Shown one piece after another: positions 290 through 61,050 of a stretch of DNA of 64,000 nt. The DNA comes from Octopus sinensis (taxonomy: Eukaryota). The position numbers and the translations under genes were made by a program. Below the pieces are notes generated by a model. The model did not search any database and was not told the DNA's origin. It saw only the letters and a program-made list of their open reading frames with translations. The stretch is taken from assembly GCF_006345805.1 (NCBI RefSeq), contig NC_043006.1, positions 25,544,001 to 25,608,000 on the forward strand, written 5' to 3'. The first letter of the stretch is position 1, and each line of letters opens with the position of its first letter.

Positions 290-351
290 AAGGGATTTTG
301 GAAAACTTTGCAACAGAAGGTTTAGATCGGAAGGATGTATTTTTTTATCAG
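290..351 (+). CDS. TUBG1: Gamma-tubulin, first exon visible in the window (E34-Q54)
   Basis: cag acceptor at 287-289 and gtaag donor at 352. Encodes (E)[20 protein letters not shown], matching gamma-tubulin [21 protein letters not shown]. Earlier exon(s) lie outside the window. Confidence 0.93.
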
Positions 352-885
352 GTAAGTTTGTGATTTTTTTTTTTAATTAAAAAGACTTCAAATTCAGATA
401 TTTTTTAAAATCAAGTAGAATAAATTGTTTGAGACACTTCATTCAAATTTGAAAATGTCCTGCAAATTATGTTGCTGGAACCCTACTGAAGATGTATTGG
501 TGTGAATATAAACTGGATCCATCTGTCACAAAGTGAAATTAATTTTTCAGTTTGATAGTTTAGACATTTTCTGTTTCTCAACATAAGCTTGTTTATATAA
601 AAATTTGTAGGGAAACCTCTTCAGATGCACTGTAAATTTTGCATTATGAATTAAACATTTTAAATAAGATTAGAGATATAATTCTGACATCATAACATAG
701 AAAGAACTTGGATGTCAGTTTTATCTTAGGAATGTATTATTTTCACTGGACAAAGATGGCTTGGTGGCAAATTGACTTCAATCGAGTGAACTAAATCATT
801 CAAATTGTAATTAGTTATGGATAAAATTTCTAAAGTTATTTGACTCTGATGGGTCACTATATTTCTGATATTCTTTTATTCATTG

Positions 886-1241
886 ACTTGTTTCAGTCAT
901 TTGATTGTGGGTGTGCTGGAGCACTGCTTTTAGTCGAAGAAATCGACCCTGGTACTTATTCTTTGTAAGCCTTGTACTTATTCTATCATTCTCTTTTGCT
1001 GAACCACTAAGTTTTGGGGACATAAACAGACCAACATCGGTTGTCAAGTGGATGGTATGTGTGGGGACAAACACACACACACAAATATATATATATATAT
1101 ATACAATGGGCTTCTTTCAGTTTCCCTCTACCAAATCCACTCACAAGGCTTTGGTCAGCCTGAGGCTGTAGTAGAAGACACTTGCCTAAGCTGCCATGTG
1201 GTTGGGAAGCAAGCTTTTTACCACATAGCCACGCCTATCCC
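886..1241 (-). mobile_element. tRNA-derived SINE, family A (head AGGCGCAGGAGTGGCTGTGTGG, tail GTAAAAGAGT)
   Basis: Reverse complement of the copies at 12191, 21170 and 40885; A-box TGGCTGTGTGG, B-box GGTTCAGTCCC and internal (TG/TA)n. Confidence 0.85.
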
Positions 1242-1344
1242 TATTGTGTATTTTTTTAAGATAATTATTGTGTTGCAATAATGTATTGAATGTAATAAAT
1301 TCTATCATTTTCAGCATTTATATTGTAATTCTTTCTCCTACTAG

Positions 1345-1512
1345 GCTGATGATGAACATTATATTCCCCGTGCTGTACTCCTTGATCTTGAACCAAGAGT
1401 TATTAACACTATCATGTCATCTCCTTATGCCAAACTATATAACCCTGAGAATGTTTTCCTTGGCAAGCAAGGAGGGGGTGCAGGAAATAACTGGGCTGTT
1501 GGTTTTTCACAG
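1345..1512 (+). CDS. TUBG1: Gamma-tubulin exon (168 nt)
   Basis: tag/GT boundaries; [56 protein letters not shown]. Confidence 0.98.
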
Positions 1513-1549
1513 GTATACATTTTATATTTCTGTTTACATAACTATTTAA

Positions 1550-1769
1550 CCCTTTAGTGTTTAAACCGGCCATATCTGGCCAAAATTGTCTTCCTGTTTT
1601 ATGCTCAAACCAGCCAGCTCTGACCTCTCAAACCTATCCTACAAAGTCATTCTAAAAATAAACAGGGACATCATCAAAATCTCAGAGTTACAAGATGCTG
1701 AACAATTAATTTAAAACAATGTAATTAAACAGGCTTTACATTTGACAGAGTAATCTGAATGCTAAAGGG
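1550..1769. mobile_element. piggyBac-type MITE
   Basis: TTAA|CCCTTTAG...CTAAAGGG|TTAA; a second copy in the opposite orientation lies at 20616-20836. Confidence 0.85.
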
Positions 1770-2011
1770 TTAAACTTTGAACTTTTTAGATTATTTATTT
1801 TTAAACTGCCAGGAAATTTTTTAGGAAAGTAAAGTTAGTATTACAGATAACCAGACTAAATGTTTACCTTATCTAGACCAGTACCTCGCATCTTGTTACA
1901 CTACAACAGCCATTTTTGCATTCCTTCAGTTTTCATTGACTTCATAGTTCCTTTTGGTCTCTAAAATCTGCCACTATTTAGCAATTTTTTATTTGATACT
2001 ACCATGCATTT

Positions 2012-4031: not shown

Positions 4032-4100
4032 GGTGAAAAGTTATATGAGGAAATATTTGATATCATTGATCGAGAAGCTGATGGAAGTGACAGTCTTGAG
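4032..4100 (+). CDS. TUBG1: Gamma-tubulin exon (69 nt)
   Basis: tag/gtaagt boundaries; GEKLYEEIFDIIDREADGSDSLE. Confidence 0.98.
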
Positions 4101-7197: not shown

Positions 7198-7277
7198 GGG
7201 TTTGTTCTTTGTCATTCAATAGCAGGTGGAACTGGATCAGGTTTAGGATCATATATGTTGGAAAAGTTAAATGACAG
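7198..7277 (+). CDS. TUBG1: Gamma-tubulin exon (80 nt), containing the GGGTGSG-type tubulin signature loop
   Basis: cag/gtaatt boundaries; [26 protein letters not shown](R). Confidence 0.98.
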
Positions 7278-11982: not shown

Positions 11983-12109
11983 GTTTCCCAAAAAGCTTAT
12001 TCAGACATATTCAGTATTTCCAAATCTGGATGAAATATCAGATGTTGTTGTCCAACCATATAATTCTCTATTAACATTGAAGAGACTTACATTGAATGCA
12101 GACTGTGTG
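11983..12109 (+). CDS. TUBG1: Gamma-tubulin exon (127 nt)
   Basis: cag/gtaagc boundaries; [42 protein letters not shown]. Confidence 0.98.
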
Positions 12110-13649: not shown

Positions 13650-13736
13650 GTTGTTTTGGATAACACAGCTCTTCACCGAATTGCAACTGATCGCCTTCGC
13701 ATTCAGAATCCAACTTTTGGTCAGATCAACTCATTG
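13650..13736 (+). CDS. TUBG1: Gamma-tubulin exon (87 nt)
   Basis: cag/gtgggt boundaries; [29 protein letters not shown]. Confidence 0.97.
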
Positions 13737-16020: not shown

Positions 16021-16170
16021 GTCTCAATTGTGATGTCAACAAGCACAGCTACACTGCGTTACCCTGGATACATGAATAATGATCTTGTAGGCTTGATTGC
16101 TTCTCTTATTCCTACACCACGACTTCATTTCTTAATGACTGGTTATACACCGTTAACAACTGACCCACAT
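16021..16170 (+). CDS. TUBG1: Gamma-tubulin exon (150 nt)
   Basis: cag/gtaatg boundaries; [50 protein letters not shown]. Confidence 0.98.
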
Positions 16171-18462: not shown

Positions 18463-18615
18463 GTTGCTAGTGTGAGAAAAACTACTGTCCTCGATGTGAT
18501 GCGTAGGCTATTACAACCAAAAAACATGATGGTCTCAACGCCTGTTCATAGACAAGACAAGCACTGCTATATTTCAATATTGAATATCATTCAAGGTGAA
18601 GTAGATCCTACACAG
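18463..18615 (+). CDS. TUBG1: Gamma-tubulin exon (153 nt)
   Basis: cag/gtaaaa boundaries; [51 protein letters not shown]. Confidence 0.98.
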
Positions 18616-19778: not shown

Positions 19779-19940
19779 GTCCACAAAAGTCTGCAGAGAA
19801 TCCGTGAGCGTAAACTGGCACAGTTTATCCCATGGGGTCCAGCCAGTATACAAGTTGCACTTTCCAGAAAATCTCCTTACATTCTAACTGCTCATCGAGT
19901 CAGTGGTCTAATGTTGGCTAATCACACCAGTATATCTTCA
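19779..19940 (+). CDS. TUBG1: Gamma-tubulin exon (162 nt)
   Basis: cag/gtgagt boundaries; [54 protein letters not shown]. Confidence 0.98.
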
Positions 19941-20379: not shown

Positions 20380-20571
20380 TTGTTTGAAAGGACCATGTCA
20401 CATTATGATAAACTGCGGAAACGAGAAGCTTTTATGGAAACATTTAAGAAAGAACCTATGTTCCACAATGATTTATCAGAATTTGATGCTTCCAGAGAAG
20501 TTTTGCAACAATTGGTGGATGAATATCATGCTGCTACCAACTCAGAGTATCTTTCTTGGGGCATGAAAAAT
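20380..20571 (+). CDS. TUBG1: Gamma-tubulin penultimate exon (reads through to TGA at 20580 if the donor is not used)
   Basis: cag acceptor; [64 protein letters not shown], followed by gtatgt (donor-like) and then tga. Confidence 0.95.
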
Positions 20572-24307: not shown

Positions 24308-24328
24308 GCATCAAAAGACGGTGTTTGA
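24308..24328 (+). CDS. TUBG1: Probable gamma-tubulin terminal coding exon (ASKDGV*)
   Basis: tttcag acceptor at 24302-24307 in phase 0, compatible with the donor at 20572. Followed by an AT-rich UTR-like stretch and AATAAA at 24582. Confidence 0.7.
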   Translation, partial: ASKDGV

Positions 24329-24581
24329 GTGCATAGAAATGTAACTCTGGAAATATAACTGATTTTGATCCAGTCTAAGAGAAGAAAATTGTGACACACA
24401 GAACTGATTTATGATTGAAAAAGTCTAGATTTGTTGATATCACTGTTCTCTACAGTAATTCAACATGCATGTCTTTCTCACTTAAACTGATATTTACACA
24501 CATTTGTTGAATCGATCCTATTTATTTCTGATTTCTGTTAACTTGATTCCTTTCATACATGTTCTGACTTATATTTTTTAA

Positions 24582-24587
24582 AATAAA
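24582..24587 (+). terminator. Candidate polyadenylation signal of TUBG
   Basis: AATAAA ~255 nt after the putative stop codon, followed by T-rich sequence. Confidence 0.5.
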
Positions 24588-24719
24588 TATTATACATTTT
24601 TTTTACATTTTCTATTTAAGACAATTTTTAAAAATGTTTAAAGTTTATTCTCATAAAAATGCGTTCTCTAACGTACATTATATTATTTCTGTTTGTTGTT
24701 AGATTGCTTGTATATGTTA

Positions 24720-35300: not shown

Positions 35301-37560
35301 ATTTCTTTACAGTCGTAATCTATGCTGTTTGAAAGGTGTTTCTGTAAAATTTCATTAAAAGATATCCATTTTCCTGAAAGTTATGAGGGGAAAATCGGAT
35401 CTTGTGAATTTTCCGACAGTCCTCTCCTCACCCCGTCCCCGTTCGTTTGTGCCAAATTTTGTTTTCACATTCGTTTTCTACACATTTTTTTACATTTATT
35501 AAACTTCTGTTTTCGTTTTGGTGACCGGGCACTAAACTAGATCCTGAAAGTTATGAGGGAAAACAACATCGTGTGAACTTTCCGATAGTCCTCTCTCCAA
35601 ACCTTCGGAAAAACATTTTCCCCACAAATTTCTTTATAATCGTAATCTACGTTGTTTGAGAGGAGTTTCTGAAAAAATTCATTAAAAGAAAGATACCCAT
35701 TTTACTAAAAGTTATGAGGGGCAAAAAAACGGATTGTGTGAATTTTCCAAGAAATTTCTTTATAATCGTACTTTGTGCCATTTGAATAGTTTTTCTATAA
35801 AATTTCATCTATATATATATATATAAGCACCAACCGATCGTGGCCGTTTGCCAGCCTGCGCTGGCGGCACGTAAAAAGCACCCACTACACTCACAGAGTG
35901 GTTGGCGTTAGGAAGGGCATCCAGCTGTAGAAACACTGCCAGATAAGACTGCCAAATCAAACTGGAGCCTGGTGCAGCCTCTATGTCTTACCAAACCCTG
36001 GTCAAACCGTCCAACCCATGCTAGCATGGAAAACGGACATTAAATGATGATGATGATGATATATCCATTTTCCTGAAAGTTAGGGAAGAATCGAATCTTG
36101 TGAATTTTCCGAAAGTCCTCTTCCCACTCACCCCGTTTGTTTGCGCATATTTTTTTTTACATTCATTTTCTACCCATTTTTTAACACTTAGTAGGTCGGG
36201 TTTTTTTTTTCCATTTTCATTAACGGGTCTTAAACTGTATATTGACCGAAATTTGCAGGGAAAATCTTTTTCCGAAGGAGTGAGGAGAGGTTTTGGGAAA
36301 ATTAACATGATCCGATTTTTTCTCTCCTAACTTTCAGGAAAATGGGTATCTTTTAATAAAACTTTTCAGATGGCATAGATTACAATTATAAAGAAAATTG
36401 TAGGGGAAAAGTTTTTCCAAGAGGGTGGGGAGAAAGGTTTTGGATCAAGAAGACCACATAAGTTGGAATTTCTCCGTTTTGACTGGGATTTTTCCAATTG
36501 CTTTTCACTACAGCCTTCAAAATAATGGGGAGCATCTTTTTATGAAAAAACAGTTTGAAAAATTTATGATTTTTTTTTACTCTCCTCCCCATTTAATGAT
36601 GATACCAATGGGCCTCAGGCATGCTCCATTGGTGGGATATCAGCATCAACAAAAGAATGATAATTTAAATTTTTACCCTCACCTTAATTAAGTGAGGCCA
36701 TGTGTATGTAAGAAAAAAACATATTCTAACAGAAAAGTATGCTATTTAAAATTAATTTTCGTTTACATACCTATTTTTAAAAAAATCACTGTGGATAAAA
36801 TGCCAGAAATGACCTCAGGCTCTCCAATATCTTAAATTATAAACAGAAACAACCAGGGGTGAAAAGTATGATCGAAAAACTCATAAATTCTCCAATTTTT
36901 TTTTTATAGTATAAATGTGTTTATGGGGAGAAAAATATTGAAAAACATCAATAAATGCAAGAGTGAGAAAGAAATGAGTAAGGTTGTCTTGGGATGTGCT
37001 AGAAACGGCAGCCAAATCGCTCTTAAATCATACTTTTACCTCTGAAAATATTTACTATTTTTTTTTTTCAACAAATAGGCTCCTCCCATAGCTTTTAAGT
37101 GCAAAATATTGGCCAGAATCGATCTGGGGGTGAGATGCAGGGAGTAAAAAAAATGAACTTATGTGGTTTTCCAGATCCGAAACTCTGTTTTTTTCTAAAC
37201 TTTTCTCCCTACCCGCTAGAAAAAAATTTTCCTCACAAATTTCTTTATGATCATAATCTATGCCATTTGAAAGGTATTTGTATACAGTTTCATTAAAAGA
37301 TACCCATTTTCCTGAAAGTTAGGAGGGGGAAAATCAGATCGTGTGAATTTTTCCCAAATCCTCTACCCACCCCTTTGGAAAACATTTTCCCCACAAATTT
37401 CTTTATAATCGTAATCTATGTCGGTTGAAAGGTGTTTCTATAAAATTTCTTTAATATATATTCATTTTCCTTTGCGCAAATTTTTGTTTTCATATTCGTT
37501 TTCTATACATTTTTTTTTACACCTGTTAAACTTTTTTTTCCTTGGTGACCGGTAGATAAA
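32400..37560. repeat. Mosaic of a ~150-bp repeat family in direct and inverted arrays
   Basis: Recurrent unit AAACATTTTCCCCACAAATTTCTTTATAATCGTAATCTATG...CCATTTTCCTGAAAGTTATGAGG...GTGAATTTTCCG on + (35281, 35610, 37220, 37380) and - (35040-35160, 36330-36420, 34850). Confidence 0.8.
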
Positions 37561-37689
37561 GTAAAACATTAACCAATTTTTCTTTTTGGTTGAATCATTC
37601 TTTCATTCTTTTCCAGATGAATAGCTTTTTTGTATATATGTTTATGTGCATGAATATATATTTGTGTATAAATGTGTATGTATATTTGT

Positions 37690-37827
37690 GTAAGTATGTA
37701 TTTATGTGTATGTAAAATTTGAATGAAATTGGTTGTGTAGTTCTCAAGTTTTAGGGATTCACACAGACACACACACAGAGACAGACAGACATACACACAC
37801 ACACATTCTCATCTTTATATATATAGA
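37690..37827 (-). mobile_element. Helitron-like 5' end
   Basis: Minus strand A|TCTATATATATAAAGATGAGAATGTGTGTG...CTGTCTGTC...AACTACACAACCAATTTCATTCAAATTTT. Confidence 0.6.
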
Positions 37828-37888
37828 TACACGCCTATAAAAAAATTTAAAATATGGTAAAAACCCTTAATAAGAAAGTATAAAGCTT

Positions 37889-38307
37889 GGATCTTTTCGG
37901 TTTGAATGGCAGTTTTTTAAGGCGGTGTCATATGAAATTGTCACCAATAATTATGACCCTAGTATCAATCTATTGCATTTCAATCTGTTTTAGGGTTAGT
38001 TAGGGGTGGGGGTGGGGGAAGGGATCTTTTTTTCTTCACAAATGTAAATAAACCCAATCTGTTTCTTAAACGAGGGACATATTCATACGGCACAGAATGT
38101 TTTCACCTCAATAGACGGTCATTGATTGGTTGAAATTGCAGAAATTGAAGAAAAAAAACAACAAATATCTTACAAACCATAGAATTTCCTCAATAAAGCC
38201 AAGAGAAAAAGATGTTTTATAAACACATTCTACCAGTATACGAAGTTTAAAATTTTTTAGTTACCTAGAAATCATGTTAAAAACTGCCGTTCAAACCGAA
38301 AAGATCC
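37889..38307. mobile_element. MITE with ~29-bp TIRs and 8-bp TSD (Merlin/hAT-like)
   Basis: GGATCTTTTCGGTTTGAATGGCAGTTTTT...AAAAACTGCCGTTCAAACCGAAAAGATCC; TSD TAAAGCTT at 37881 and 38308. Confidence 0.9.
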
Positions 38308-38589
38308 TAAAGCTTTAACTCGGTTGTATTTCTAACAACAATAATAATAAGATTTGGAGAACTTTGCTGAACTGTGGTTAACATGCAATTTGGTAAAATA
38401 AAAAAAAGTGAAAGTAAATTGCTTGTGACATTTCGTAATTTCACGTAAACAATGCATATAACTAAACAATGTATGGAACATATATTTATATTTGATATTA
38501 AGATAAAAGTAATCACATTTACTGGAAAATATAACAGTCATTGATGCATGAATTGAGACTCATGAATAATTTTTCCTGTTCTCTAGATT

Positions 38590-39365
38590 TGTTTTGGCTA
38601 TAATTTTTAACACCTGCTCTGCTACCTCCTTTATGGATAGAGCGTGAAGGCGCATGGCTCAGTGGTTAGAGCGTCGAGCTTACGATCGTGAGGTTGTGAG
38701 CTCGAATCCCGGACCGGGCTGCGTGTTGTGTTCTTGAGCAAGGCACTTTATTTCACGTTGCTCCAGTTCACTCAGCTGTAGAAATGAGTTGCGATGTCAC
38801 TGGTGCCAAGCTGTATCGACCTTTGTCTTTCCCTTGGATAACACTGGTGGCGTGGAGAGGGGAGGCTGGTATGCATGGGCGACTGCTGGTCTTCCATAAA
38901 CAACCTTGCCCGGACTTGTGTCTAGGAGGGTAACTTTCTAGGTGCAATCCCATGGTCATTCATGACCGAAGGGGGTCTTTTTATGGATAGAGCATATTCC
39001 TTCTTTTCGTTTGTCTGGAAGATTACCACTTGCAAGAAAGTTCCAAAAAAGAAGCTGCAGTGGTTTTGCAAGGGCTTGTTTGCATGATGTGAGAAGGGCC
39101 AGCAGCTGAGTTTGTGTCCACCTCATCTACGGCTAGTGTTGATGTAATCAGTTTTCACTTCTTTGGTTACAGCTAAAATGGCAAAGAATTCTGCTGGTTT
39201 ATTCAATTGCTTGTATTCCAGAGGTGTAGTGAACACCCTTTGGAACTTTTCGTTTCATATCTCACTTATCCTCATTGGGTTTCTTGTGAGAGAGTTATCT
39301 TTTTGGAAGAGGGGCCCTATCTTGTGGTGTACTGAGGCTGTTTCTTTGCCAAAGTTAAAAAAGCT
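38590..39365 (-). mobile_element. CR1/Jockey-group LINE fragment (linker and start of RT), interrupted by a SINE
   Basis: The minus strand reads ...SGNLPDKRKEGICSIHKGGSRAGVKNYS across the SINE insertion. Confidence 0.65.
38644..38979 (+). mobile_element. tRNA-derived SINE family D with CORE-like central domain
   Basis: GGCGCATGGCTCAGTGGTTAGAGCG...GCTCGAATCCC head; CTTGAGCAAGGCACTT...CAGCTGTAGAAATGAG; 14-bp TSD TTTATGGATAGAGC. Confidence 0.9.
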
Positions 39366-39375
39366 TTAGGGTTTA

Positions 39376-39965
39376 AATAATAATAATTGTGTACAGTGCT
39401 CAGGTGCACTACAACTCATCTAAAGTGTATATATAATCAGGTGTAGTTTCGGCGGATTTCGGAAAGCATGAGGGCCTTAAAGGATGCAGTGTCATGGCAG
39501 TCAACAACTGACACAGGCAGTTTATTCCATGCTTCAGCAACTCTGAGCGTGAAAAAATGTTTCCGAAAGTCATGGGAGCTGTGTTGTTTTCTGACTTTGT
39601 AGGCATGTCCACGTGTGTTAGACACATGGAGATCAAAAAGGTGTTCAGTGTTGTTGTTGGTGAGGTGGTTGATAACTTTGTGGGTGTTTACCAAGTCCGT
39701 CGCCAGACGCCGGAGCTTCAGTGAATCCATGCCCAGAGAAACAAGGCACTCAGAATATGGTAGGTGTCTGATGGAGTGTATGCGTTTGGTTGCATGTCTC
39801 TAGACAGATTCCAGGAGGTCAATGTTCTGAGCAAGATAGGGGTTCCAAACTGACTTGATATTTTCTATAATTCAGGCTTCCTTATCTATACACTCTTCTT
39901 TGTGAGATTGATGCAGACTTTTCTCAATCGCCTACAGCACTTCTCTTCAGGCAGGACTTTTCACT
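39376..39965 (-). mobile_element. CR1 LINE 3' end with (TTA)n tail
   Basis: LKLRRLATDL...SNTRGHAYKVRKQ...RKHFFTLRVAEAWNKLP. Confidence 0.85.
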
Positions 39966-40100
39966 ATTTTTGAGGTGCTTGTTCAGGCAGTCGGCAATCT
40001 TTGTCTGTTTATGTATACATATATATGTATATATATAATGTATATGTATGTATATATAATGTATATGTTTGTGTGTGATTATAGATATGTGTGTGTGCAC

Positions 40101-40203
<103 letters not shown>

Positions 40204-40587
40204 TGTGTGTGTATATATATATATTTATATATATATATATATAAATATGTATATGTATATGTATATATCTATGTGTGTCATCTTCATCATCATTTAACAT
40301 CCGTTTTCCATGTTGGCATGAGTTAGTTTGATTGAAATGTATATATATATATATTTGGCTGTTGCTGGTGTTATGTAAGTGGCAAGTAAAAGGCACCCAT
40401 TACATTCACAGAGTGGTTGGCATTAGGAAAGGCATCCAGCCATAGTAACCATCCCTAATCAGACTGGAACCTGGTGCAGCCCTCCAGCTTACCAGATTCA
40501 GTCAAACTGTCTATCCCATGCTAGTATGGAAAGGGATCGTTAAATGATTATGATGTATAGGTATATATATATGTACATGTGTATATA

Positions 40588-41880
40588 CAGGGTGCAATGG
40601 GTAAATTGTTGCCATTTTATATTTCTAATTTCGCATGTGTGCGTTGTTTGTTTTTGATTTTGTCAATACACAATGTAGTAGGGTCAGTAGGGCACTGTCT
40701 GTGAGAAAAACAGCACCATAACAGAATTCACTCTGCTAGAAATTTCGAAACACAATGCTGTACTGCCAAGCAGTACAGCATGAAATACCGGAAGCTCCAG
40801 TACAAACATTTCAGAGTCTTTGGGTGTCTGAGGACTGTGCAATCTGAGGACATGTACTGAGAGTGAAAAAAAAAAAACGAACATAGGCGCAGGAGTGGCT
40901 GTGTGGTAAGTAGCTTGCTTACCAACCACTTGGTTCCGGGTTCAGTCCCACTGCGTGGCACCTTGGGCAAGTGCCTTCTACTATAGCCTCGGGCCGACCA
41001 AAGCCTTGTGAGTGGATTTGGTAGACGGAAACTGAAAGAAGCCCGTCATATATATGTATATATATATATGTGTGTGTGTGTTTGTGTTTATCCCCCCCCA
41101 ACATCGCTTGACAACCGATGCTGGTGTGTTTACGTCCCCGTTACTTAGTGGTTCGGCAAAAGAGACCGATAGAATAAGTACTAGACTTACAAAGAATAAG
41201 TTCTGGGGTCGATTTGCTCGACTAAAAAAGGCGGTGCTCCAGCATGGCCGCAGTCAAATGACTGAAACAAGTAAAAGAGTAAAGAGAAAAGAGTATCCAG
41301 TCACCATCATGGTGTTTGGAGTGATCGCTAGTGATAGCAATGTTATGCCTCCATTCATCTTCCCACACACCCTCAGACTCAATACAGATACCTATATCAT
41401 GTGCCTAGAGGAGGTAGTGCTACCCTGGATCAAGAGAGTGGCTGCTGGAAGACCTTATGTCTGGTAACAGGATTCTGCATCATGCTACACAAGTTGGAAA
41501 ACCCAGTCATGGCGACCACATCACCCCTAACATCTGGCCACCTGACTCTCCAGATTGCAACCCCCTTGATTATTATGTGTGGGGTGCAATTGATCGAGAG
41601 ATGAAGAAAATTCCTTGTAATACCAAGGATGAGCTGAAGACAAGGATTATGGCAGCATTCACTAACTTAAACTAGGAGACTGTCCAGAAGAGTTGCAGGA
41701 GATTCTGAAGTTGTCTGGAGGGCGTGGTTGAAGCCAATTGGGATTTTTATTGAATAAATTTACTCCTTAGTATATCAAGATATTTTTATATAATTTTGGT
41801 AAATATATCTGTTAAAATGAGATGTCATTGTTATTTTCATTTTTGTATAATTTAGACAGCAATATATTCACCACACCCTG
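40588..41880 (+). mobile_element. Internally deleted maT (DD37D) transposon with a nested family-A SINE (40885-41294)
   Basis: TA|CAGGGTG...CACCCTG|TA; PVTIMVFGVIASDSNVMPPFIFP...RPYVW*QDS...WPPDSPDCNPLDYYVWG. Confidence 0.9.
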
Positions 41881-43429
41881 TATACACACACATGTATGTA
41901 CAGTGGCCCGGAAACAAAATTTGCTTAGGGAGTGCAAACCCATGTCCAAAATTTTTACAAACAAGGTGGATTTTTCCAATCTTGATATCAAAACAAACAC
42001 AGGTTCAGTAATAATAACTTTTATTATTATGATGTTAGCTGAAAAGTTTATAGGAATGTGACCAAATGAAGTTCATTTTTAAATATTGGGATCTTTTCTA
42101 CTTGGTGTCACTTTTTGAAACTTTAAAATGAAGTGAAAATTTTCAAATTTGATATATTGATGTAATTTTTCAAGTTGAATCTTATGTTATTCACTTGTTC
42201 CAGAAAATCTTTAGAAAAATATTACAGAGGTTTAAAGTTTGATCATTTTCACCCAATCAGAAAACAGGAATTGGAAGCTGGCATTTTGTATGTGATGACA
42301 ACATTACAATGACAAAACATTCAACAATGGGAGTTTTAATCAGTTTTAATGAATAAAATTTTGTGAAATGTTGGATAAACATACTGTTGCTTTAGTTCAC
42401 GTGAACAATACATATTTTTGAAATTAATTGGAACAAAACTGAAGGAATTGAAAAGTGAAAATCAAACAGGAAAGATCCTCTACACACTTCTTTCAGCATT
42501 GCAGTGCTTTGATTGCCTTTGTGAAAAATCTATCCTGTTAGTCAAACAAGTCTTCAACAGCTGATAAGACGTCATCACTATGATATTGGTCCTTTAATTT
42601 GGAGGATTCCAAAATAGATTTCTAATATAGTTTCTTCATATTTTGCTGGTAGCTTACTGGCGTAAAATTGCAAATATGAAAATAATACTTGTATGTTGTG
42701 TGTTGTTAATTTATTGAAAGGGATCCCATAAAACTCAACTAATTTGTTAAAAATGAAGATGTTAAAATCTAAGAGATGTTTAATTTATGCAGAGTATCAT
42801 TTTGAACAGTGATACAAAAATCATGGAAATTCATGGTTGAACAGAAACTATCAAATTAATTAAATTAATTTAATTATATATCACTGTACTCATTAGTGCA
42901 AGAAGTATAAACAAAATTTTTTTATAAAGGACTTGATAGAGGAAATAGTAGAGTAGGATTTTGGAGATTCATTTTTATCCTTATGAGACAGAAAGAGGAG
43001 TTGTAAGTCCAGTTAGGTATTAACTAAAACTAAAAGCTATAACGGTTATTTGCAAATAGAAGTGAAAGAGGTTTTAGAGACATTCCCTCTATAGATGAGT
43101 AAGGTGAGTAGTAATTCATACTCCAAATAAGTCACGTAGGGTAAAGGTTGTATAGAAATCACTCTAGCATTAACCCTATCACTGAAATATATAATAGTCG
43201 GCAGTGATATATGGTAATAGTTTTGCTACTGTAGTAGTAGGTACGGTGGTAATATGGTTGTAGTGTTGTGTGGAACTGAAGTGATGTAAGACACATTTGT
43301 GTTATATTCTGTGGACTCTTCCTTCCCACATTAGCAGTAGGACAAGTAAAGAAAAGTGACAGGGTTACTGAACATAAAACTGGTTGTTGTTGAGATTGAA
43401 TAACCCTCACTTTTGAATAGGCTTTATGC

Positions 43430-46400
43430 ATATTAGTAGCTATGGATTAATGTAAAAGATATGCTGTAGAATTGAGCTGAAGCTGTGGTGAAGGTGGAAG
43501 TGGGAGAGTGGGTAGGCCCTGTTGGTAGTTCCTGAGGACGGAAGTGTTCAAGAGAGCATGCGCAGCGGGGACAGGAAGAGGGCAGAGTGCAGCCGGACTG
43601 CATGAAGTCAAGACATGTGTATGTACGACCAACAGAAGAAAAAGACCGTGTGGGTGGTGAGAGAATGCTCCCTCCAAATCGACAGCAATTCTCCTTTTTC
43701 CTAATTTCCCCCTTCATACCACAAGTTATTTCGGCTCATTGTGTAGTATCAAAAAGTAAAACAAAAATTACTATTCATGGTAAAATATGGCATCAAAAAT
43801 TAAACTCAGCAACAACATGTTGAAACCATTCTCTGGTCAAGGCGATGTGGTGGCCTGGATAAAGAAGGTGAAGCTGGTAGTAAAATTGCAGGGGATACAG
43901 GACATAGCCAACCTCCTACCTTTGTATTTAGAAGGTAGTGCACTGAACTTGTATCTAGAGATGTTGGAAGATGATCAGCAAAAGATCTTAAAGATCGAGG
44001 AATGGCTGAAAGTTACTTACACAGAGGGAGCCTTTAAGGTGTATAGTAAACTTGGAAGTGTGAGGTGGACTGGAGAACAGGTTGATGACTATGTGAGTGA
44101 GATTAGGAGATTGGTGGCTTTAGCAGTGATTTCCTGCGGGGCAATGGAGAGTGTTGTGAGATTGGCCTTTGTGACTGGATTTCCCAATCACATCTGAATA
44201 AGTTTGCTGGTGAGTGAGTTGATAGAGCGAACTTGTGTCATGACTCAGAACAACACACACGATGTAGTTTGTATGATGATGGAGATGAAAACAAGAAAGA
44301 GATGAATGGAAACTATCTGTAAGAAGAATGAGGCGAGAAAAGCTGGTGAATGATGAAGGGACCATGTTTCAGGTGTCGGGGTCCTCATATAGTCAGAGAC
44401 TGCATGGCACCAAAACCGGAAGTGGTGTGCTACTGGTGTGACCAGCCTGGGCACATTGTTAACCAGTGCAAACGGAAATGGATGGAGGGTAGCTACTGCT
44501 AGCTACCCCATCAACTGATTAGAGGCACACTCATGGTCACTACCAATAATAAACTTTCAGGTGGGGTCGAGAGAGGCTTGAGCCCTTGTGGATACTGGTT
44601 GCACTACAATACTGGTAACCCAAGTCTGAGCAGGAAAGTTAGGTGCAGAGGCGAGATCAGAATACAATTGATAGTGCAAGGGTTGGTAGTGAAGGTTCCA
44701 GTGATTGTTGTCAATGAAGTGGTGGACAGCATTGACTTAGTGGTGGGAATAGAGCGATTGTCCAGCTAGGAGTGGAATTCGGCAACCGATGTGCTGTGTG
44801 CTTTGAGTATGGAGAGGTGGAGGAAGGCTACAAGAGTGATGGAACACATGTAGAAATGTATGTGACATTGAAGACAAGAAAACAGGATGAGCTGTTATGA
44901 ACACCCCTTCAAAAGAGGAGCCAGGAATGAATTCGAGAGGGAGGTGGAGTGATGGATAGAGGAGAGTATTTTGAGGCCATGGAAGGAGAAGAGAAAAATG
45001 GTGTGTTGCCCTTAATGACTGTGGTCCAGCCCATGAAGAACAAGGTTTGTCCAATACTCAATTTCCATGAAAGGAATGAGCACATGTCATCCCATATGAG
45101 TGGTGAGGTAGCAGACGTCTGTGAGGAAATTTTGTGGGTTTGGAGGCGCATGACAGGAGCAACTACAATTGTCGACCTGAAGTTGGCCTATCTGTAACTC
45201 CATGTGTCCAAGAAACTGTGGATGTACTAGTTGGTGAGGTACAAGAGTAGAACTCACTGCTTGGCTCAGTTGGGGTTTGGCTTGAGTTTGGCACCAAAAG
45301 TTATGGCAAAGGTCTTAAAGACGGTCTTGGGGAAAGTGGCTGAGGTTGAGCAAGCAACTAATTCATACATTGACAGCAGAGGTAATTATAGATCATCTGA
45401 AGAAGTTTGGGCTGATTGCTAAACCACCAGAGGCCATAGAAGGAGATGCTGTACTGAGGCTCAAGATTGAAAAAGATAAGATGGGCAGGCTTGTTTTTCA
45501 TTGAGAAAATGAGATTCCAGGCCTGAGCAAAGATATGAGTAGACAAGAACTCTTCTCAGTGTGTGAAAAGTTGGTAGGACACTATCCAATTGCAGGATGG
45601 CTCCGGAAGCATGTATCTTCATCAAGAGGCATGCCGAAGGAGTAAAGTGGAGTGACAAAGTTGGGGAGAAGACAACTGCCATGATGCAAGATGTTTTGGA
45701 GAGAGTGAGAGTTTGGAGGATCCAGTGAGGGTATCTGGAATGTGCTCGAAACAAAAAAGGGAGTTGTTTGGTGTGATGCAAGTAGCATCGCAATAGGAGT
45801 CATCCTGGAAGTGGGGGTTGTAGAGGTGGAAGATGCAGCATGATTCAGAAAAAAGGATGACTCCAGCCACATCAATGTAGCTGAATTGGATGCTGTACTA
45901 AAGGGCATGAACTTGGCACTGAGATAGGAGCTCCATGTATTGGAAATTTGAACTGATTAGGCCACAGTAAGAGGGTGGGTGGCATCAGTGATCAGCAATC
46001 AAAGGAGAGTCCACACAAAAGGAGACGCGGAAATGATAGTGAAGCAGTGGTTAGGAATCCTCAGAGAGCTGGTCGCTGAGTTTGGCTTGGTAGTGTTTTC
46101 ACCTTCAGAAAAGAATAAGGCAGATGTGCTAACCAGGGTGAAAAAGCCCTGGTTGGTGGAAGTAGAGGATGTACAGAGTGTGGTGGATGCAGCGTGTCAC
46201 CTGGTGGGCTCAGAGCTGAGGAGGTTGCACAGCATGTTCCTGGCCAGGGAAGTGGACCCTAATGTTACTAGGGAAAGTGTTTGGAAAGTGGTGCAGAGCT
46301 GCATCAGATGCCAGTCTATAGACCCCACACTGAGTGTGTATGAGGCAGAAAGGATTCAGGTTGGAGAAGATTGGAAGAGGTTGGCGATAGATATGACTCA

Positions 46401-47382
46401 ATTATCTGGGAAGGCAGTACATCTCAGTGGTTGACTGGGGGTCAGGAAGAATGACAATATAGAAGGAAATTTGGACGGGTGCTGCGGCTGAAACTGTAGA
46501 GGTCCTAAATGTGGTATTCCTGGAGAGGGGTCCAGTTGATGAGCCATTGATGGACAACAGTGCAGTGTTTCACTCAGCTTAGTTGAAAGAAATTCGCGAC
46601 CAATGGAATACCAGACGTTTCTTAAGAGCAGCATATAGGCCTGGTGGGAATGGGATAATAGAGCAACACCATTGCACAATGAAAGCCATTGCTGAGAGGG
46701 GACAGATTTCCCCTATTGAAGCAGTGTTCTGGTACAACATGTCACCAAGGTCAAGACATGCTGGGGAGACAGTCCCTCAAAAGGCTGTGTTTAGATACGA
46801 ATGCAGACACCTGAGCGTAGAACCACAACCCTTTGGGGAAGAAGAACAGTTAGCAATTGTTCAAATCAGGGAAGAAGTGTGGGTGAAAGGAAGGGTGACA
46901 GCAGTGAACTCACATAACAACATGTTGGTGGAAGGAGTGCTGTGTCACGTCCTAGATATCAGGAAGGTCATGAGCTCCTCCAGTGATGAAGAACAAAGAG
47001 AGGGAGAGGCTGGCATTGCATCTTTGTGATGATCCCAAAGAGAGCGTCGTCCACCTAAGTGGCTGGAAGACTATGAAAGGGATGTGATAGTAATTGGTAG
47101 ATCAGTGAGGCATATGGTATTGAGCTGAAGCTGTGGTAAAGGTGGCAGTGGGAGAGTGGGTAGGCCCTGTTGGGAGTCCCCGAGGACAGAAGTACTTAAA
47201 AGAGCAGGCGCAGCGGGGACAGGGAGAGGGCAGAGTGCACTCGGACAGCATGAAGTCAAGACGTGTGTGTGTACGACCAACAGAAGAAAATCATCATGTG
47301 GGTGGTGAGAGAACGCTCCCTCCAAATCAACAGATAAGAAAACCTCAATTCTCCTTTTTCCTAATTTCCCCTTCATACCACA
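43430..47382 (+). mobile_element. Near-complete, decayed LTR retrotransposon (gag-PR-RT-RH-IN)
   Basis: 5' LTR ~43430-43723 and 3' LTR 47083-47382 (TGT...ACA), preceded by the purine tract GAAAGGGA. Gag from 43787 with two CCHC-like knuckles, PR ALVDTGC (~44582), RT LGFGL...SYID (~45270-45372), RH WCDASS...HINVAEL (~45770-45890), integrase with C..C, MDN and NGIIE motifs (46200-46700). Confidence 0.92.
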
Positions 47383-47843
47383 TATGCCTAACTCCACGCT
47401 GTCTCAAGCTATGCTTTACACATTGTTATGTGTAATACAGTGCTTAGTCAGTCATACTATTTTCTATGTATAATATCTTCCCCTGTCATTTCTTGTTAAT
47501 ACTGAAATGAGAAAATGTGCCCAATTGGTATGTTTATTTTAATTATATTAAAATATTAGCTTCTGAATAGGTACAAAATCATAGATCAACAAAGGTGTTT
47601 GAAGAGTTTTAATTGATGTAAGTAAAGGGAATTAATCCCACCCACCAATAATTAATTTTGACTAATTTTAAGGGATCTTCAAGAAAAGCACAATATTTCC
47701 AATTAAAGTTTCTGACAAAATTCAGTGTCATTAATTAATATCAAAAAGGAAGAAAACTTTTTGTTGACAAACTAGTACATTCAACTTTCGGTGCAATGGA
47801 AACCCGTAAAAGGCCGATGTTTGCCGATTACACCACGAATTTA

Positions 47844-47853
47844 ATGACGTCAT
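47844..47853. promoter_or_regulatory. Perfect CRE/ATF palindrome in the CpG-rich RETREG promoter region
   Basis: ATGACGTCAT ~90 nt upstream of the ATG; the local CpG density is visibly high. Confidence 0.5.
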
Positions 47854-47941
47854 ATCTGAACTGCTCGGGAGAAAATGATGTGCCTCCTCTTGGGTGTTGT
47901 TCTTTCCTCAGTCGACGCGTCGTTCATTCTCTGAACGTGCC

Positions 47942-48087
47942 ATGGACTCTGACACTAAACCAGAAGGCTTGCTGGAAGCCATTCTCAGTCCATGGGAAGG
48001 ATGGATTTTGAGAATACAGAGTTTATTAATATGGGAGAAACCGCGATGGGCTATAGTTTGGTTATGTTTAATTCATCTTCTATTTTG
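47942..48087 (+). CDS. RETREG: Reticulophagy regulator (FAM134/RETREG family), coding exon 1
   Basis: gccATGG Kozak context. MDSDTKPEGLLEAILSPWEGWILRIQSLLIWEKPRWAIVWLCLIHLLF(W) aligns by eye to human RETREG3 LVEVLGPYEPLLSRVQAALVWERPARSALWCLGLNAAFW. Phase-2 donor tg|gtaggt. Confidence 0.9.
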
Positions 48088-56378: not shown

Positions 56379-56485
56379 GTTCTTCTACAACATACCCCTT
56401 AATTTCTATTCATTTTGCTGTTGTTCTGTCATAGTTCTTTTCATCCTTGATCTTTTAATAAATAAAATTTGGAAGAAAATAACAT
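56379..56485 (+). CDS. RETREG: RETREG/FAM134 exon 2 (107 nt; reticulon-homology hydrophobic segment)
   Basis: ttgcag acceptor and gtaagt donor. (W)FFYNIPLNFYSFCCCSVIVLFILDLLINKIWKKIT, compare human DQWKNKIWPEIK. Phase is compatible with exon 1. Confidence 0.88.
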
Positions 56486-57594: not shown

Positions 57595-59370
57595 TATGAC
57601 TCTGTATGGCATTTTTATTGGTTTCACTATAAAACCCTCATTACCAACAGTTTCTGTAGTACCTTGTTCCTCACCATAATGCCCTCAAACTAAAATTTTC
57701 TGGAGTATCTTATCCTCTTAGCCATGTTGTCTGTATGGCATTCTCGTAGGTTTCAATATAATGCCCTCACCACTAATAGTTTCTGTGGTACTTTATCATC
57801 TTGGCCATGTTGTCTGCATAGCATTCGTTTTGGTTTCACTATAATGCCCACATCACCAACAGTTTCTGTAGTGTATTCTCTTCTTAGACATGTCGTCTGT
57901 ATTGCTTTTTGGTTGGTTGCACTGTGATGAGTTTTTTGTAGTATCTTATCTCCTTAGCCATGCTGTTTGTATGGCATTCTTGTTTGTTTCACTATTATAC
58001 CGTCACCACCACCATTTTCTGTAGTATCTTATCATCTTAGCCATGCTGTTGCTATGGATTTCTTGTTCGTTTCCCTGTAGTACCATTACCAGCAATGCTT
58101 TCTGTAGTATCCCCTTAGCCATGCTGTGTGTATGGCGTCCACATTGGTTTCACCATAAGGACCTCACCTGCCACAGTTTCTGTAGTATATTCCCCTCTTA
58201 GACATGTTGTCTGTATGGCTTTTTCATCTACAATGCCCTTATCATTAAGTGTCCGTAGTATCTTACCGTCTTAGCCATGCTGTCTGTATGGCATCCACAT
58301 TGGTTTCAGTACAATGACCCTATCACCAACAGCTTTTGCAGTACCTTTTCCTCTTAGGCATGTTGTGTGCGTTGCATTCTTGATGGTTCAACTATAACGC
58401 CCTCATCATGAATAGTTCCTATTTTATCTCATCCTTTAAGCCATGTTGTCTATAGCATTCTCATTGGATTCACCATAATGCCCTCACTAGCAACAGTTTC
58501 TGTAGTACGTTATCCTCTTAGTCACGTTGTCTGTATGGCATTCTTATCGGTTTCACACTGATGCTGTGGTTTCACTATGATGCCCACAGTACCAATAGCT
58601 TCTGTAGTATCTTATCATCTGAGCCATGCTCTCTGTATGGCATTCGCATTGGTTTTACTATAATGCCCCCACAACCAGCAGTTTCTGTAATATCTTTTCC
58701 TTTTAGCCATGTTGTCTGTATGGCATTCACATTAGTTACACTGGAATACCCAGACCACCAACACTTTCTGTACTATCTTCGCCTTGTAGCCATCTTCTGT
58801 GTATGGCATTTTTGGTGGTTTCACTATTAAGTCCCCATCACCAATAGTTTCTGTAGTACCTTGTTCATCACTATGATACCGATTTCTTTATTACCCACAA
58901 GGAGCTAAACACAGAGGGGACAAACAAGGACAGACATAGGTATTAAGTCGATTCCATCGACTCCAGTGCGTAACTGGTACTTAGTTTATCGACCCCGAAA
59001 GGATGAAAGGCAATGTCGACCTCGGCGGAAATTGAACTCACAACGTAACGCAGACGAAATACCGCTAAGCATTTTGCCCGGCGTGCTAACGTTTCTGCCA
59101 CCTTGCCGCCTTGTTCACTATGATACCCTCATCACAACCAGTTTATCCTCGTGGCCATGTTGTGTATATGGCATTCTTGTTTGTTTTGGCTATAATGCCC
59201 TCATCACCTGTAGTGTCTCTAGCATCTTATCATCTATCTGAGCCATGTTTCTGTATGGCATTCGTGTGTTGCTTTCACTATAACACTCTCACCACCAGCA
59301 GTTTCTATAGTATCTTATGCTGCTAGTCTTGTTTGTATGGCATTCTTGTACGTTTCACTATAATGCCCTT
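57595..59370. repeat. Degenerate ~83-bp tandem array (~19 units) interrupted by a SINE
   Basis: GCCATG(T/C)TGTCTGTATGGCATT... recurs at 57721, 57804, 57887, 57957, 58040, 58118, 58201, 58274, 58357, 58440, 58623, 58706, 58789, 59154 and 59242. Confidence 0.9.
58881..59112 (-). mobile_element. SINE family C with 12-bp TSD
   Basis: CACTATGATACC at 58869-58880 and 59116-59127. Confidence 0.9.
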
Positions 59371-59466
59371 TTAAAGAACTTAATTATATAACATAGAAAC
59401 TGACTATTGCACTGTTACGTAGCGGTACATTAAGGTCTCCTTCCTAAGCTAGTGATTATAGTAGGC

Positions 59467-59873
59467 TCTCTTTTCTCTTTTTTACTTGTTTCAGTCATTT
59501 GACTGCGGCCATGCTGGAGCACCGCCTTTAGTTTAGCAACTCGACCCCGGGACTTATTCTTTTTGTAAGCCCAGTACTTATTCTATCGGTCTCTTTTTCC
59601 GAACCGCTAAGTGGCAGGGACGTAAACACACCAGCATCGGTTGTCAAGCAATGCTAGGGGAACAAACACAGACACACAAACACACACACATACATATATA
59701 TACATATATACGACAAGCTTCTTTCGGTTTCCATCTACCAAATCAACTCACAAGGCATTGGTCGGCCCGGGGCTATAGCAGAAGACACTTGCCCAAAATG
59801 CCACGCAGTGGGACTGAACCCGGAACCATGTGGTTGGTTAGCAAGCTACTTACCACACAGCCACTCCTGCGCT
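59467..59873 (-). mobile_element. SINE family A
   Basis: Full-length reverse-complement copy. Confidence 0.9.
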
Positions 59874-60281
59874 GAAGACAACTTATTAAAATATTTGGTC
59901 CTTGGGATGGGAATGTTAATAACTTTGTGAAGGTTGCATGGGCTAATTTTTGGTGTGTTGGGGGCCATGATCATAAGGTTGTGCATTGAATTCCTGGACT
60001 GCATGTTGTTTCCTTGAGCAAGGCATTTCAGTCTTTTCAGCTGAAAATGAATACCTGCAGCAATATCTAGGGTTATCTTTGTGATGAACTGGTATCTTCT
60101 ACAGGGATGCATTCAAAGATAGGGGAGCGACTGCCTGATGTTTCATTTTTACAATAGAAAGGCTATTGTGATATCCTGAGTTGCCTGTTGCCTTAATTGA
60201 CATACACATAATTGACAGCTGGACAATAAATTGACTATCAGTACAATATGGTTGAGAAAGCGTGAATAGCAAACAAAAAAC

Positions 60282-60692
60282 GTATCTTTTCGGTTTGAAC
60301 GGCAGTTTTTAACATAAATTCTAGGTAACTAAAAAATTTTAAACTTCGTATACTGGTAGAATGTGTTTATAAAACATCTTTTTCTCTTGGCTTTATTGAG
60401 AAAATTCTAGAGTTTGTAAGATATTTGTTGATTTTTTTCTTCAATTTCTGCAATTTCAACCAATCACTGACCTCTATTGAGGTAAAAAACATTCTGTGCC
60501 GTATGAATATGTCCCTCGTTTAAGAAACAGATTGGGTTTATTTACATTTGTGAAGAAAAAAAGATACCCTTCCTCCCACCCCTAACCCTAACCCAGATTG
60601 AAATGCAGTAGATCGATACTAGGGTCATAATTATGGGTGACAATTTCATATGACACCGCTAGAAAAAACTGCCGTTCAAACCAAAAAGATCC
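60282..60692. mobile_element. Second copy of the 8-bp-TSD MITE, in the opposite internal orientation
   Basis: Same TIRs; TSD CAAAAAAC at 60274 and 60693. Confidence 0.9.
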
Positions 60693-60989
60693 CAAAAAAC
60701 TAGAGACCAGAGAAACTCGTGGTGGGCTATGTGAGCAAAATTCAAGCCTCTAACCTTCTTCCCAACTGCACAGTTGCTACCACTACCATTAATGCCATTC
60801 AAATTGATCATCCCTGTCTGATGTTTGTTCCCATACACACATGGGTGGCACTGATTAGTAAGCTGACCTCCTCATTTCCACATTTGTTTTAACAATTTTT
60901 TTTCTCTACTTCATTTAGTTATTTAGTTAGTTTATCATCACATGTTTTGTTTCATATTGAATTTTCTTATCTGTTGTTTTTACTTCCAG

Positions 60990-61050
60990 CCGTCTTCCTT
61001 AGAATCAGAACCAGATTTTGTAATAGATTTAAAATCAAAGTTCCGGAGAG
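60990..61050 (+). CDS. RETREG: Probable RETREG exon 3 (61 nt)
   Basis: Long pyrimidine tract ending in cttccag, and a gag ag|gtaagc donor. The frame continuing from exon 2 is open, (S)VFLRIRTRFCNRFKIKVPE(S/R), and ends GAG AG| like the vertebrate E-S junction. Confidence 0.55.

What the first reader, a model, noticed from the sequence alone, without database searches (positions are those of the whole stretch)
290..61050. Gamma-tubulin next to RETREG/FAM134: possible ancient bilaterian microsynteny
Seen: TUBG is followed ~23.6 kb later by a FAM134-family gene on the same strand, with no other recognisable protein-coding gene between them. Established (from memory, verify): human TUBG1 and RETREG3/FAM134C are immediate head-to-head neighbours on 17q21. 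Inference: the linkage survived from the bilaterian ancestor despite extensive coleoid genome reshuffling, with a local inversion changing divergent to tandem orientation. That would uncouple the linkage from a shared bidirectional promoter.
Basis: partly seen in the sequence, partly recalled or inferred. Interest (0 to 1): 0.72.

Follow-up and report, generated by a model that had tools for sequence, protein, structure and literature searches.

The report
Ancient gamma-tubulin–RETREG gene pair, flipped in octopods
An octopus genome keeps gamma-tubulin next to the ER-phagy receptor gene RETREG, a pairing also seen in mammals, an acorn worm, a brachiopod, snails, clams and a worm, but in octopods one gene has been flipped, so the two no longer share a promoter.

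Summary
The window comes from Octopus sinensis or O. vulgaris. It holds gamma-tubulin (TUBG) exons 2-12 on the + strand (290-24328). After 23,613 bp come the first three, perhaps four, exons of a RETREG/FAM134 gene on the same strand (47942-61050, possible cassette exon 63322-63429). I found only transposon-derived ORFs between the two genes.

RETREG and TUBG lie head-to-head, 263-743 bp apart, in a mammal, a hemichordate, a brachiopod and a gastropod. They are divergent but further apart in a bivalve and an annelid. A paper reports 0 bp in human and 496 bp in axolotl. The octopod Argonauta shares the window's tandem order (2-hydroxyacid dehydrogenase ←, TUBG →, RETREG →). The flip is therefore derived and predates the Argonauta-Octopus split. 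A single inversion of TUBG, with one break in the shared promoter, is the simplest route.

Three things are not shown:
- whether squids or Nautilus share the flip;
- where the breakpoints lie;
- whether selection, rather than inertia, keeps the pair together after the flip.

This is a new, well-documented member of a known class: conserved head-to-head pairs. Interest is modest.

The parts
290..351 (+). TUBG exon 2 (exon 1 lies upstream of the window)
   Evidence: AG/GT borders; part of a model identical to P0288
1345..1512 (+). TUBG exon 3
4032..4100 (+). TUBG exon 4
7198..7277 (+). TUBG exon 5
11983..12109 (+). TUBG exon 6
13650..13736 (+). TUBG exon 7
16021..16170 (+). TUBG exon 8
18463..18615 (+). 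TUBG exon 9
19779..19940 (+). TUBG exon 10
20380..20571 (+). TUBG exon 11. The donor GT is at 20572. If that donor is not used, the frame reads on to a stop at 20578-20580, giving the C-terminus of O. bimaculoides isoform X1.
24308..24328 (+). TUBG exon 12, coding part (ASKDGV, stop 24326-24328). The 3' UTR follows.
   Evidence: the annotated end of the O. bimaculoides gene maps here
24329..47941 (.). Spacer of 23,613 bp between TUBG and RETREG. It holds transposon debris and one block, 24435-24601, that is collinear with Argonauta.
43471..47333 (+). Degenerate LTR retroelement. The LTRs are 43471-43685 and 47119-47333, 89% alike. It ends about 600 bp upstream of the RETREG start codon.
47296..47334 (+). 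Coding part of the alternative first exon of RefSeq RETREG3 isoform X2 (O. sinensis). It lies in the 3' LTR, and one base past the reported repeat copy.
   Evidence: 13/13 residues identical
47942..48087 (+). RETREG exon 1 (ATG at 47942; donor TG|GTAGG inside a Trp codon)
56379..56485 (+). RETREG exon 2 (rest of the first membrane hairpin, including the NKIW motif)
60990..61050 (+). RETREG exon 3. This small linker exon has the same phases as the 31-nt exon 3 of Aplysia.
63322..63429 (+). Possible in-frame 108-nt cassette exon. O. bimaculoides isoforms X1, X2 and X4 include it. O. bimaculoides X3 and O. sinensis X2 skip it.

Best explanation
RETREG and gamma-tubulin formed a head-to-head gene pair in the last common ancestor of protostomes and deuterostomes. 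Their start sites lay a few hundred bases apart, the signature of a shared bidirectional promoter.

In the lineage leading to octopods a small inversion flipped TUBG. One break fell in or next to the shared promoter and the other beyond the 3' end of TUBG. The 3' end of TUBG now faces the 5' end of RETREG, so the pair is tandem (TUBG → RETREG →). The 5' end of TUBG now faces a 2-hydroxyacid dehydrogenase gene.

The pair has stayed adjacent since then, most simply by inertia. Transposons swelled the spacer from about 8 kb in Argonauta to 23.6 kb in this Octopus.

Shown: the gene identities, the orientations, the taxonomic spread, and that Argonauta and Octopus share the tandem state. Inferred: the single-gene inversion, the position of the breakpoints, and the neutral persistence.
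For: Gene identities.

Head-to-head RETREG(-)|TUBG(+), with gaps between gene ranges:
- 378 bp in the mammal Galemys; its exon 1 matches named RETREG3 proteins
- 346 bp in Lingula
- 263 bp in Saccoglossus
- 743 bp in Aplysia
- about 8.8 kb in Mya
- about 5 kb in Capitella, with a THAP gene in between
- human 0 bp and axolotl 496 bp (PMC5766544 Table 3)

Octopods: Argonauta hians has 2-Hacid_dh(-) twice, then TUBG(+), then RETREG(+) about 7 kb downstream, with no gene called between. O. bimaculoides has 2-Hacid_dh(-) upstream of TUBG. The window and Argonauta are collinear through the TUBG exons, one non-coding block and RETREG exon 1.

Geometry: flipping TUBG alone turns ←RETREG|TUBG→ into ←RETREG ←TUBG. 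Read on the other strand, that is TUBG→ RETREG→. Flipping RETREG alone would put RETREG upstream of TUBG, which is not what is seen.

Because two molluscs (Aplysia, Mya) keep the divergent state, the octopod state is the derived one.
Against: - No 2-Hacid_dh gene lies within 10 kb downstream of TUBG in any non-cephalopod locus. The predicted ancestral order (TUBG → 2-Hacid_dh →) is therefore unconfirmed, and more than one rearrangement may have occurred.
- No decapodiform or Nautilus locus was available, so the event is dated only as earlier than the Argonauta-Octopus split.
- Mytilus (two species), a spider, Nematostella and Trichoplax show no RETREG within 10 kb of TUBG. The pair has been broken, or spread beyond 10 kb, several times. 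It may not predate bilaterians.
- Only one representative per lineage was examined, and each flank was limited to 10 kb.
Confidence: 0.8

Rival explanations
1. The linkage is actively maintained. The two genes share regulatory elements or a chromatin domain, or RETREG enhancers lie inside or next to TUBG. Breaks between them would then be selected against even without a common promoter, which is why the pair survived in a heavily rearranged genome.
For: - The pair survives in at least six bilaterian lineages.
- It stays gene-free and adjacent in two octopod families after the promoter was split (window).
- One collinear non-coding block, 24435-24601, is conserved with Argonauta.
- Conserved pairs in general are enriched for co-regulation (Irimia et al. 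2012, PMC3514665).
Against: - The conserved block lies just 3' of the last TUBG exon and is most simply 3' UTR.
- The rest of the spacer is unconserved transposon debris, and its length varies threefold.
- The pair was lost or spread apart in Mytilus and a spider.
- Adjacency that persists within one order after a local inversion is what neutral expectation predicts.
- No expression or chromatin data were examined.
Confidence: 0.15
2. The tandem order arose by another route. RETREG may have been relocated, or duplicated and then lost, to the 3' side of TUBG. Alternatively, two or more overlapping inversions may have occurred, rather than one inversion of TUBG alone.
For: - The new upstream neighbour of TUBG (2-Hacid_dh) is not found downstream of TUBG in any outgroup locus, as the one-step model would predict.
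- Coleoid genomes are known for extensive rearrangement (PMC9023564).
Against: - One inversion is more parsimonious than any multi-step path.
- Outgroup flanks were limited to 10 kb and most had no called gene downstream.
- Neither the TUBG search nor the RETREG profile search turned up a second octopus TUBG or RETREG.
Confidence: 0.2
3. The octopod arrangement is an assembly or annotation artefact, or the adjacency is a coincidence.
For: The region is rich in repeats, and RefSeq models here include transposon-derived first exons.
Against: - The same order and orientation appear in this window and in an independent Argonauta hians assembly. The two are collinear at the DNA level.
- O. bimaculoides places both genes on the same chromosome-scale contig and has the same upstream neighbour.
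- The same two families are neighbours in eight other lineages.
Confidence: 0.02

Closest known systems
Human and vertebrate RETREG3 (FAM134C) - TUBG1 head-to-head pair at 17q21.2
   Same: The same two gene families are immediate neighbours. The mammalian partner is RETREG3 by name. Human distance is 0 bp and axolotl 496 bp (PMC5766544). The exon 1 boundary of RETREG is identical.
   Different: In vertebrates the genes are divergent and share a promoter region of less than 1 kb. In the octopus they are tandem, 23.6 kb apart, and the 5' end of TUBG faces a 2-hydroxyacid dehydrogenase gene.
Conserved ancestral microsyntenic pairs (Irimia et al. 2012, Genome Res, PMC3514665), for example HSPE1-HSPD1
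   Same: It is a pair of unrelated genes adjacent across several phyla, mostly 5'-5', with intergenic distances under 1 kb. That paper treats such distances as a signature of bidirectional promoters.
   Different: The paper's main text does not name TUBG or FAM134, and its supplementary lists are not held. I could not tell whether this pair is already on that list. In this case the orientation changed in one lineage while adjacency was kept.
Metazoan microsyntenies retained in coleoid cephalopods (Schmidbaur et al. 2022, Nat Commun, PMC9023564)
   Same: It is an ancestral linkage that survives in a cephalopod genome known for large-scale reorganisation.
   Different: For its topological analysis that study required clusters of at least three genes. 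Neither gene appears in its text or in its six held supplementary files. That work is based on squid (Euprymna); this evidence comes from octopods only.

Membership tests
gamma-tubulin (TUBG) | Tubulin/FtsZ GTPase domain plus tubulin C-terminal domain, with gamma-type sequence | tested here: met
   The spliced model is 100% identical to proteins carrying PF00091 and PF03953 and named tubulin gamma-1 chain. The named proteins among the 120 best hits are overwhelmingly gamma-tubulins; a few are unnamed or 'hypothetical' entries.
gamma-tubulin (TUBG) | Intact spliced reading frame | tested here: met
   Eleven exons have AG/GT borders and no internal stop. Exon 1 lies outside the window.
RETREG/FAM134 ER-phagy receptors | N-terminal reticulon-homology domain (Pfam RHD_RETREG1-3) | tested here: met
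   Window exons 1-3 score 48.5 bits against a cut-off of 27, covering profile positions 2-69 of 184. The O. bimaculoides orthologue covers the remainder at 106 bits.
RETREG/FAM134 ER-phagy receptors | C-terminal LC3-interacting region (DDFELL-type) | not testable with these tools
   The 3' exons lie beyond base 64000. The orthologous O. bimaculoides and O. sinensis proteins end in ...ELADDFEFLDSTELDDH. Binding was not tested.
RETREG/FAM134 ER-phagy receptors | Orthology shown by gene structure | tested here: met
   Exon 1 ends at TTT TG|GT in window, Argonauta, Galemys, Lingula and Saccoglossus. tblastn matches in Aplysia, Capitella and Mya end at the same 'FW'. Exon 2 ends in phase 1 and exon 3 ends in phase 2 in both octopus and Aplysia.
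Conserved ancestral microsyntenic pair | Adjacency of the same two orthologues in several distant lineages | tested here: met
   Seen in a mammal, hemichordate, brachiopod, gastropod, bivalve, annelid and octopods. Absent within 10 kb in Mytilus, a spider, Nematostella and Trichoplax.
Bidirectional-promoter gene pair | Divergent (5'-5') orientation with start sites less than 1 kb apart | tested here: not met
   In the window and in Argonauta the genes are on the same strand, with the 3' end of TUBG facing the 5' end of RETREG, 23.6 kb and about 7 kb apart. The feature is met in Galemys, Lingula, Saccoglossus and Aplysia.

The most novel reading that the evidence does not exclude
The TUBG-RETREG linkage is held together by something other than the shared promoter. 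This could be a common chromatin domain or long-range elements that couple microtubule nucleation to ER remodelling. If so, it persisted in octopods for a very long time after the promoter was split. The octopod locus would then be a natural experiment separating 'shared promoter' from 'shared neighbourhood' as the cause of deep microsynteny.
Probability: 0.12. Interest if true: 0.6.

Novelty: new member of a known kind. Interest (0 to 1): 0.33.

Why it matters
Deeply conserved head-to-head pairs are usually explained by a shared bidirectional promoter. This pair is conserved from mammals to molluscs, yet in octopods the promoter has been split by a one-gene flip while the genes stay neighbours.

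That gives a clean comparison. The same two genes can be studied with and without a common promoter, to ask whether their co-expression depends on the promoter or on the neighbourhood. It also gives a simple rare genomic change that can be scored in squids, Vampyroteuthis and Nautilus as a phylogenetic marker.

It does not change what is known about either protein. Both genes are already annotated in RefSeq for these octopuses.

Tried and rejected
- Protein search with window exon 1 plus a guessed second exon, and with an alignment of exon 1 peptides from six species. Both returned only fragments. One search showed why: the representative of the octopus 90% cluster (P0281) is an isoform that lacks exon 1.
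- Pfam scan of three-frame translations of 47.9-50.9, 55.8-57.7 and 59.9-61.4 kb. It found only exon 1; exons 2 and 3 were too short on their own.
- An exon 3 read in another frame (PSSLESEPDFV...), which looks like the acidic linker of other RETREGs. I rejected it because it is incompatible with the splice phases and with the RefSeq proteins.
- The idea that the antisense ORF over the cassette exon (63187-63489, - strand) is a Penelope-type GIY-YIG remnant. It has no Pfam support.
- A loose tblastn of the short exons against all loci. It was mostly noise.
- A search for 2-Hacid_dh downstream of TUBG in outgroup loci. Nothing was found.
- Literature searches found no paper that discusses this pair as a microsynteny. 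The supplementary lists of Irimia et al. 2012 are not held.
- Squid, cuttlefish and Nautilus could not be tested.
Full report
WHAT IS IN THE WINDOW

The sequence is AT-rich, repeat-laden animal DNA. I used a remembered human TUBG1 only as a guide for tblastn. It located ten + strand exons of gamma-tubulin, and all have AG/GT borders.

The spliced protein was 100% identical to 'tubulin gamma-1 chain isoform X1 [Octopus bimaculoides]'. However, the window DNA is only 78-99% identical (mostly 87-96%) to the O. bimaculoides locus. Cluster look-up and sequence retrieval settled the source. With the donor at 20572 and a small terminal exon at 24308-24328 (ASKDGV, stop), the model equals residues 34-456 of the O. 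vulgaris / O. sinensis protein, 423 of 423.

Exon 1 lies upstream of the window. Base 290, the start given in the finding, is the first base of exon 2.

THE SECOND GENE

An open frame at 47942-48087 reads MDSDTKPEGLLEAILSPWEGWILRIQSLLIWEKPRWAIVWLCLIHLLFW. It hits Pfam RHD_RETREG1-3. Exon 2 (56379-56485) and exon 3 (60990-61050) were fixed from the DNA and from RefSeq proteins recovered later. Together, exons 1-3 score 48.5 bits against a cut-off of 27.

Exons 2-3 are identical to 'reticulophagy regulator 3 isoform X2 [Octopus sinensis]'. Exon 1 matches O. bimaculoides isoforms X1 and X3. A 108-nt in-frame exon at 63322-63429 is used by some O. bimaculoides isoforms and skipped by others. The rest of the gene lies beyond base 64000.

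The full-length orthologues end in ...DDFEFLDSTELDDH, the family's LC3-interacting-type motif. Base 61050, the end given in the finding, is the last base of exon 3.

The TUBG stop codon and the RETREG start codon are 23,613 bp apart.

THE SPACER

ORFs of 80 aa or more between the genes are transposon pieces or low-complexity repeats:
- a reverse-transcriptase fragment (RVT_1, 27509-27922) and a weak DDE_3 transposase remnant (41418-41672);
- a - strand retroelement piece with a YIDD motif at 28.4-28.7 kb (read directly from the translations);
- a degenerate LTR element of about 4 kb, with LTRs at 43471-43685 and 47119-47333 that are 89% alike.

No Rfam family or tRNA is present. The Argonauta annotation calls no gene in the homologous interval.

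Against Argonauta the window is collinear only at the TUBG exons, one block of about 165 bp just 3' of the last TUBG exon (24435-24601), and RETREG exon 1 with about 130 bp upstream. Everything else that matches is a short dispersed repeat.

IS THE LINKAGE ANCIENT?

I looked up the genomic surroundings of TUBG orthologues, 10 kb on each side, in eleven other species.

A gene whose product carries RHD_RETREG1-3 lies on the opposite strand, 5' end to 5' end with TUBG, in:
- the mammal Galemys, gap 378 bp;
- the brachiopod Lingula, 346 bp;
- the hemichordate Saccoglossus, 263 bp;
- the gastropod Aplysia, 743 bp;
- the bivalve Mya, about 8.8 kb;
- the annelid Capitella, about 5 kb, with a small THAP-domain gene in between.

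The Galemys exon 1 peptide matches proteins named RETREG3. A paper on the axolotl genome tabulates RETREG3-TUBG1 as neighbours, with distance 0 (overlapping exons) in human and 496 bp in axolotl (PMC5766544 Table 3).

No RETREG lies within 10 kb of TUBG in two Mytilus species, a spider, Nematostella or Trichoplax.

By parsimony the head-to-head pair was present in the protostome-deuterostome ancestor. I have no evidence that it is older.

ORTHOLOGY

In window, Argonauta, Galemys, Lingula and Saccoglossus, RETREG exon 1 ends in ...FW, with the donor inside the Trp codon (TTT TG|GT). tblastn matches in Aplysia, Capitella and Mya end at the same 'FW'.

In Aplysia, exon 2 ends with a one-base overhang and a 31-nt exon 3 ends with a two-base overhang. 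The octopus has the same phases with a 61-nt exon 3.

The TUBG search and the RETREG profile search showed no second octopus TUBG or RETREG. A paralogue more than 50% identical would have been merged into one representative, so this is not proof.

WHAT HAPPENED IN OCTOPODS

Argonauta hians has two 2-hydroxyacid dehydrogenase genes on the - strand. TUBG follows on the + strand, and RETREG follows on the + strand about 7 kb further on. O. bimaculoides also has a 2-Hacid_dh gene on the - strand upstream of TUBG.

The tandem state is therefore shared by two octopod families. Because Aplysia and Mya keep the divergent state, it is derived.

Flipping TUBG alone converts ←RETREG|TUBG→ into the observed order. 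Flipping RETREG alone does not. One break must have fallen in or beside the few hundred bases between the two start sites. This step is inference. I could not find 2-Hacid_dh downstream of TUBG in any outgroup flank, so additional rearrangements cannot be excluded.

The spacer grew from about 8 kb (Argonauta, stop to ATG) to 23.6 kb here through transposon insertions.

WHAT THE SPLIT PROMOTER DOES AND DOES NOT SHOW

It does not follow that something else holds them together. After a one-gene inversion the genes are still neighbours, and they remain so until another break happens to fall between them.

The spacer shows no conservation beyond a probable 3' UTR block, and its length is free to vary. 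I therefore rate selective maintenance as possible but unsupported (about 0.15).

COMPARISON WITH WHAT IS KNOWN

Irimia et al. 2012 (PMC3514665) described conserved head-to-head pairs with sub-kilobase spacing as a class. Their text does not mention these genes and their lists are not held.

Schmidbaur et al. 2022 catalogued metazoan microsyntenies retained in the squid Euprymna. For the topological analysis, clusters had to hold at least three genes. Neither gene appears in the text or in the held supplements.

Only six papers in the library mention RETREG3 and TUBG1 together, and none discusses evolution beyond the axolotl table.

I file this as a new, well-documented member of a known kind, with an orientation change that is a usable rare genomic marker.

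LIMITS

- Each lineage has one representative, and flanks reach only 10 kb.
- There is no squid, cuttlefish or Nautilus locus.
- No expression, start-site or chromatin data were examined.
Every conclusion rests on database proteins retrieved afterwards.

Noticed in passing
window 43471-47334: A degenerate LTR retroelement ends about 600 bp upstream of the RETREG start codon. RefSeq isoforms in two Octopus species (O. sinensis X2, O. bimaculoides X2) begin with a coding first exon inside its 3' LTR (47296-47334 here; 13/13 residues identical to O. sinensis X2). That exon splices to exon 2. If real, an LTR-driven promoter makes a RETREG that lacks the first part of its membrane hairpin.
   Followed up: partly
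window 60990-61050 and 63322-63429: Other RETREGs share an acidic linker, RVPPxxPEDxDxWTPVHP, between the two membrane hairpins. Octopus replaces it with a basic peptide from a longer exon 3 (SVFLRIRTRFCNRFKIKVPE). Some O. bimaculoides isoforms add a 36-residue cassette exon. Exon 3 and the cassette exon are 71% and 82% identical between the two Octopus species, against 34 of 35 residues for exon 2. These exons are therefore weakly constrained.
   Followed up: partly
window 20572-20580 and 24308-24328: TUBG has two alternative C-termini. Read-through of the exon 11 donor gives ...MKNVC-stop, as in O. bimaculoides isoform X1. Splicing to a tiny exon 3.7 kb downstream gives ...MKNASKDGV-stop, as in O. 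sinensis/vulgaris; Argonauta and Callistoctopus proteins have the same length of 456 aa, though their C-termini were not read.
   Followed up: yes
window 24435-24601; L005 26946-27097: This is the only non-repeat, non-exon block in the spacer that is collinear with Argonauta (72% over 169 bp). It lies about 100 bp beyond the TUBG stop codon and is probably 3' UTR.
   Followed up: no
window 57671-59318: A degenerate minisatellite with a unit of about 83 bp (11 or more copies, 65-78% matches) fills part of RETREG intron 2. It produces long spurious ORFs in all three frames.
   Followed up: partly
window 5599-5975, 12186-12598, 22274-22664, 40883-41295, 59477-59870: A dispersed repeat of about 400 bp occurs at least five times in the window. 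All copies match one place in the O. bimaculoides locus (L001 86.8-87.2 kb), and a core of about 100 bp matches three places in the Argonauta locus. It is probably a SINE-like element shared by octopods.
   Followed up: no
L001 1-2898; L005 1-488 and 3785-6316: In octopods the gene now facing the 5' end of TUBG is a D-isomer-specific 2-hydroxyacid dehydrogenase. Argonauta has two tandem copies. It lies 3.7-7 kb away, so TUBG is no longer in any tight bidirectional arrangement.
   Followed up: partly
L010 5381-6203: In Capitella a 114-residue THAP-domain gene sits between RETREG and TUBG. It is probably a domesticated or recent transposon insertion into the old shared promoter region.
   Followed up: no
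window 27509-27922, 53280-53573, 41418-41672: Fragments of reverse transcriptase (RVT_1: E 1e-7 in the spacer, E 9e-12 in RETREG intron 1) and a weak DDE_3 transposase remnant (E 0.002, below the cut-off).
   Followed up: yes
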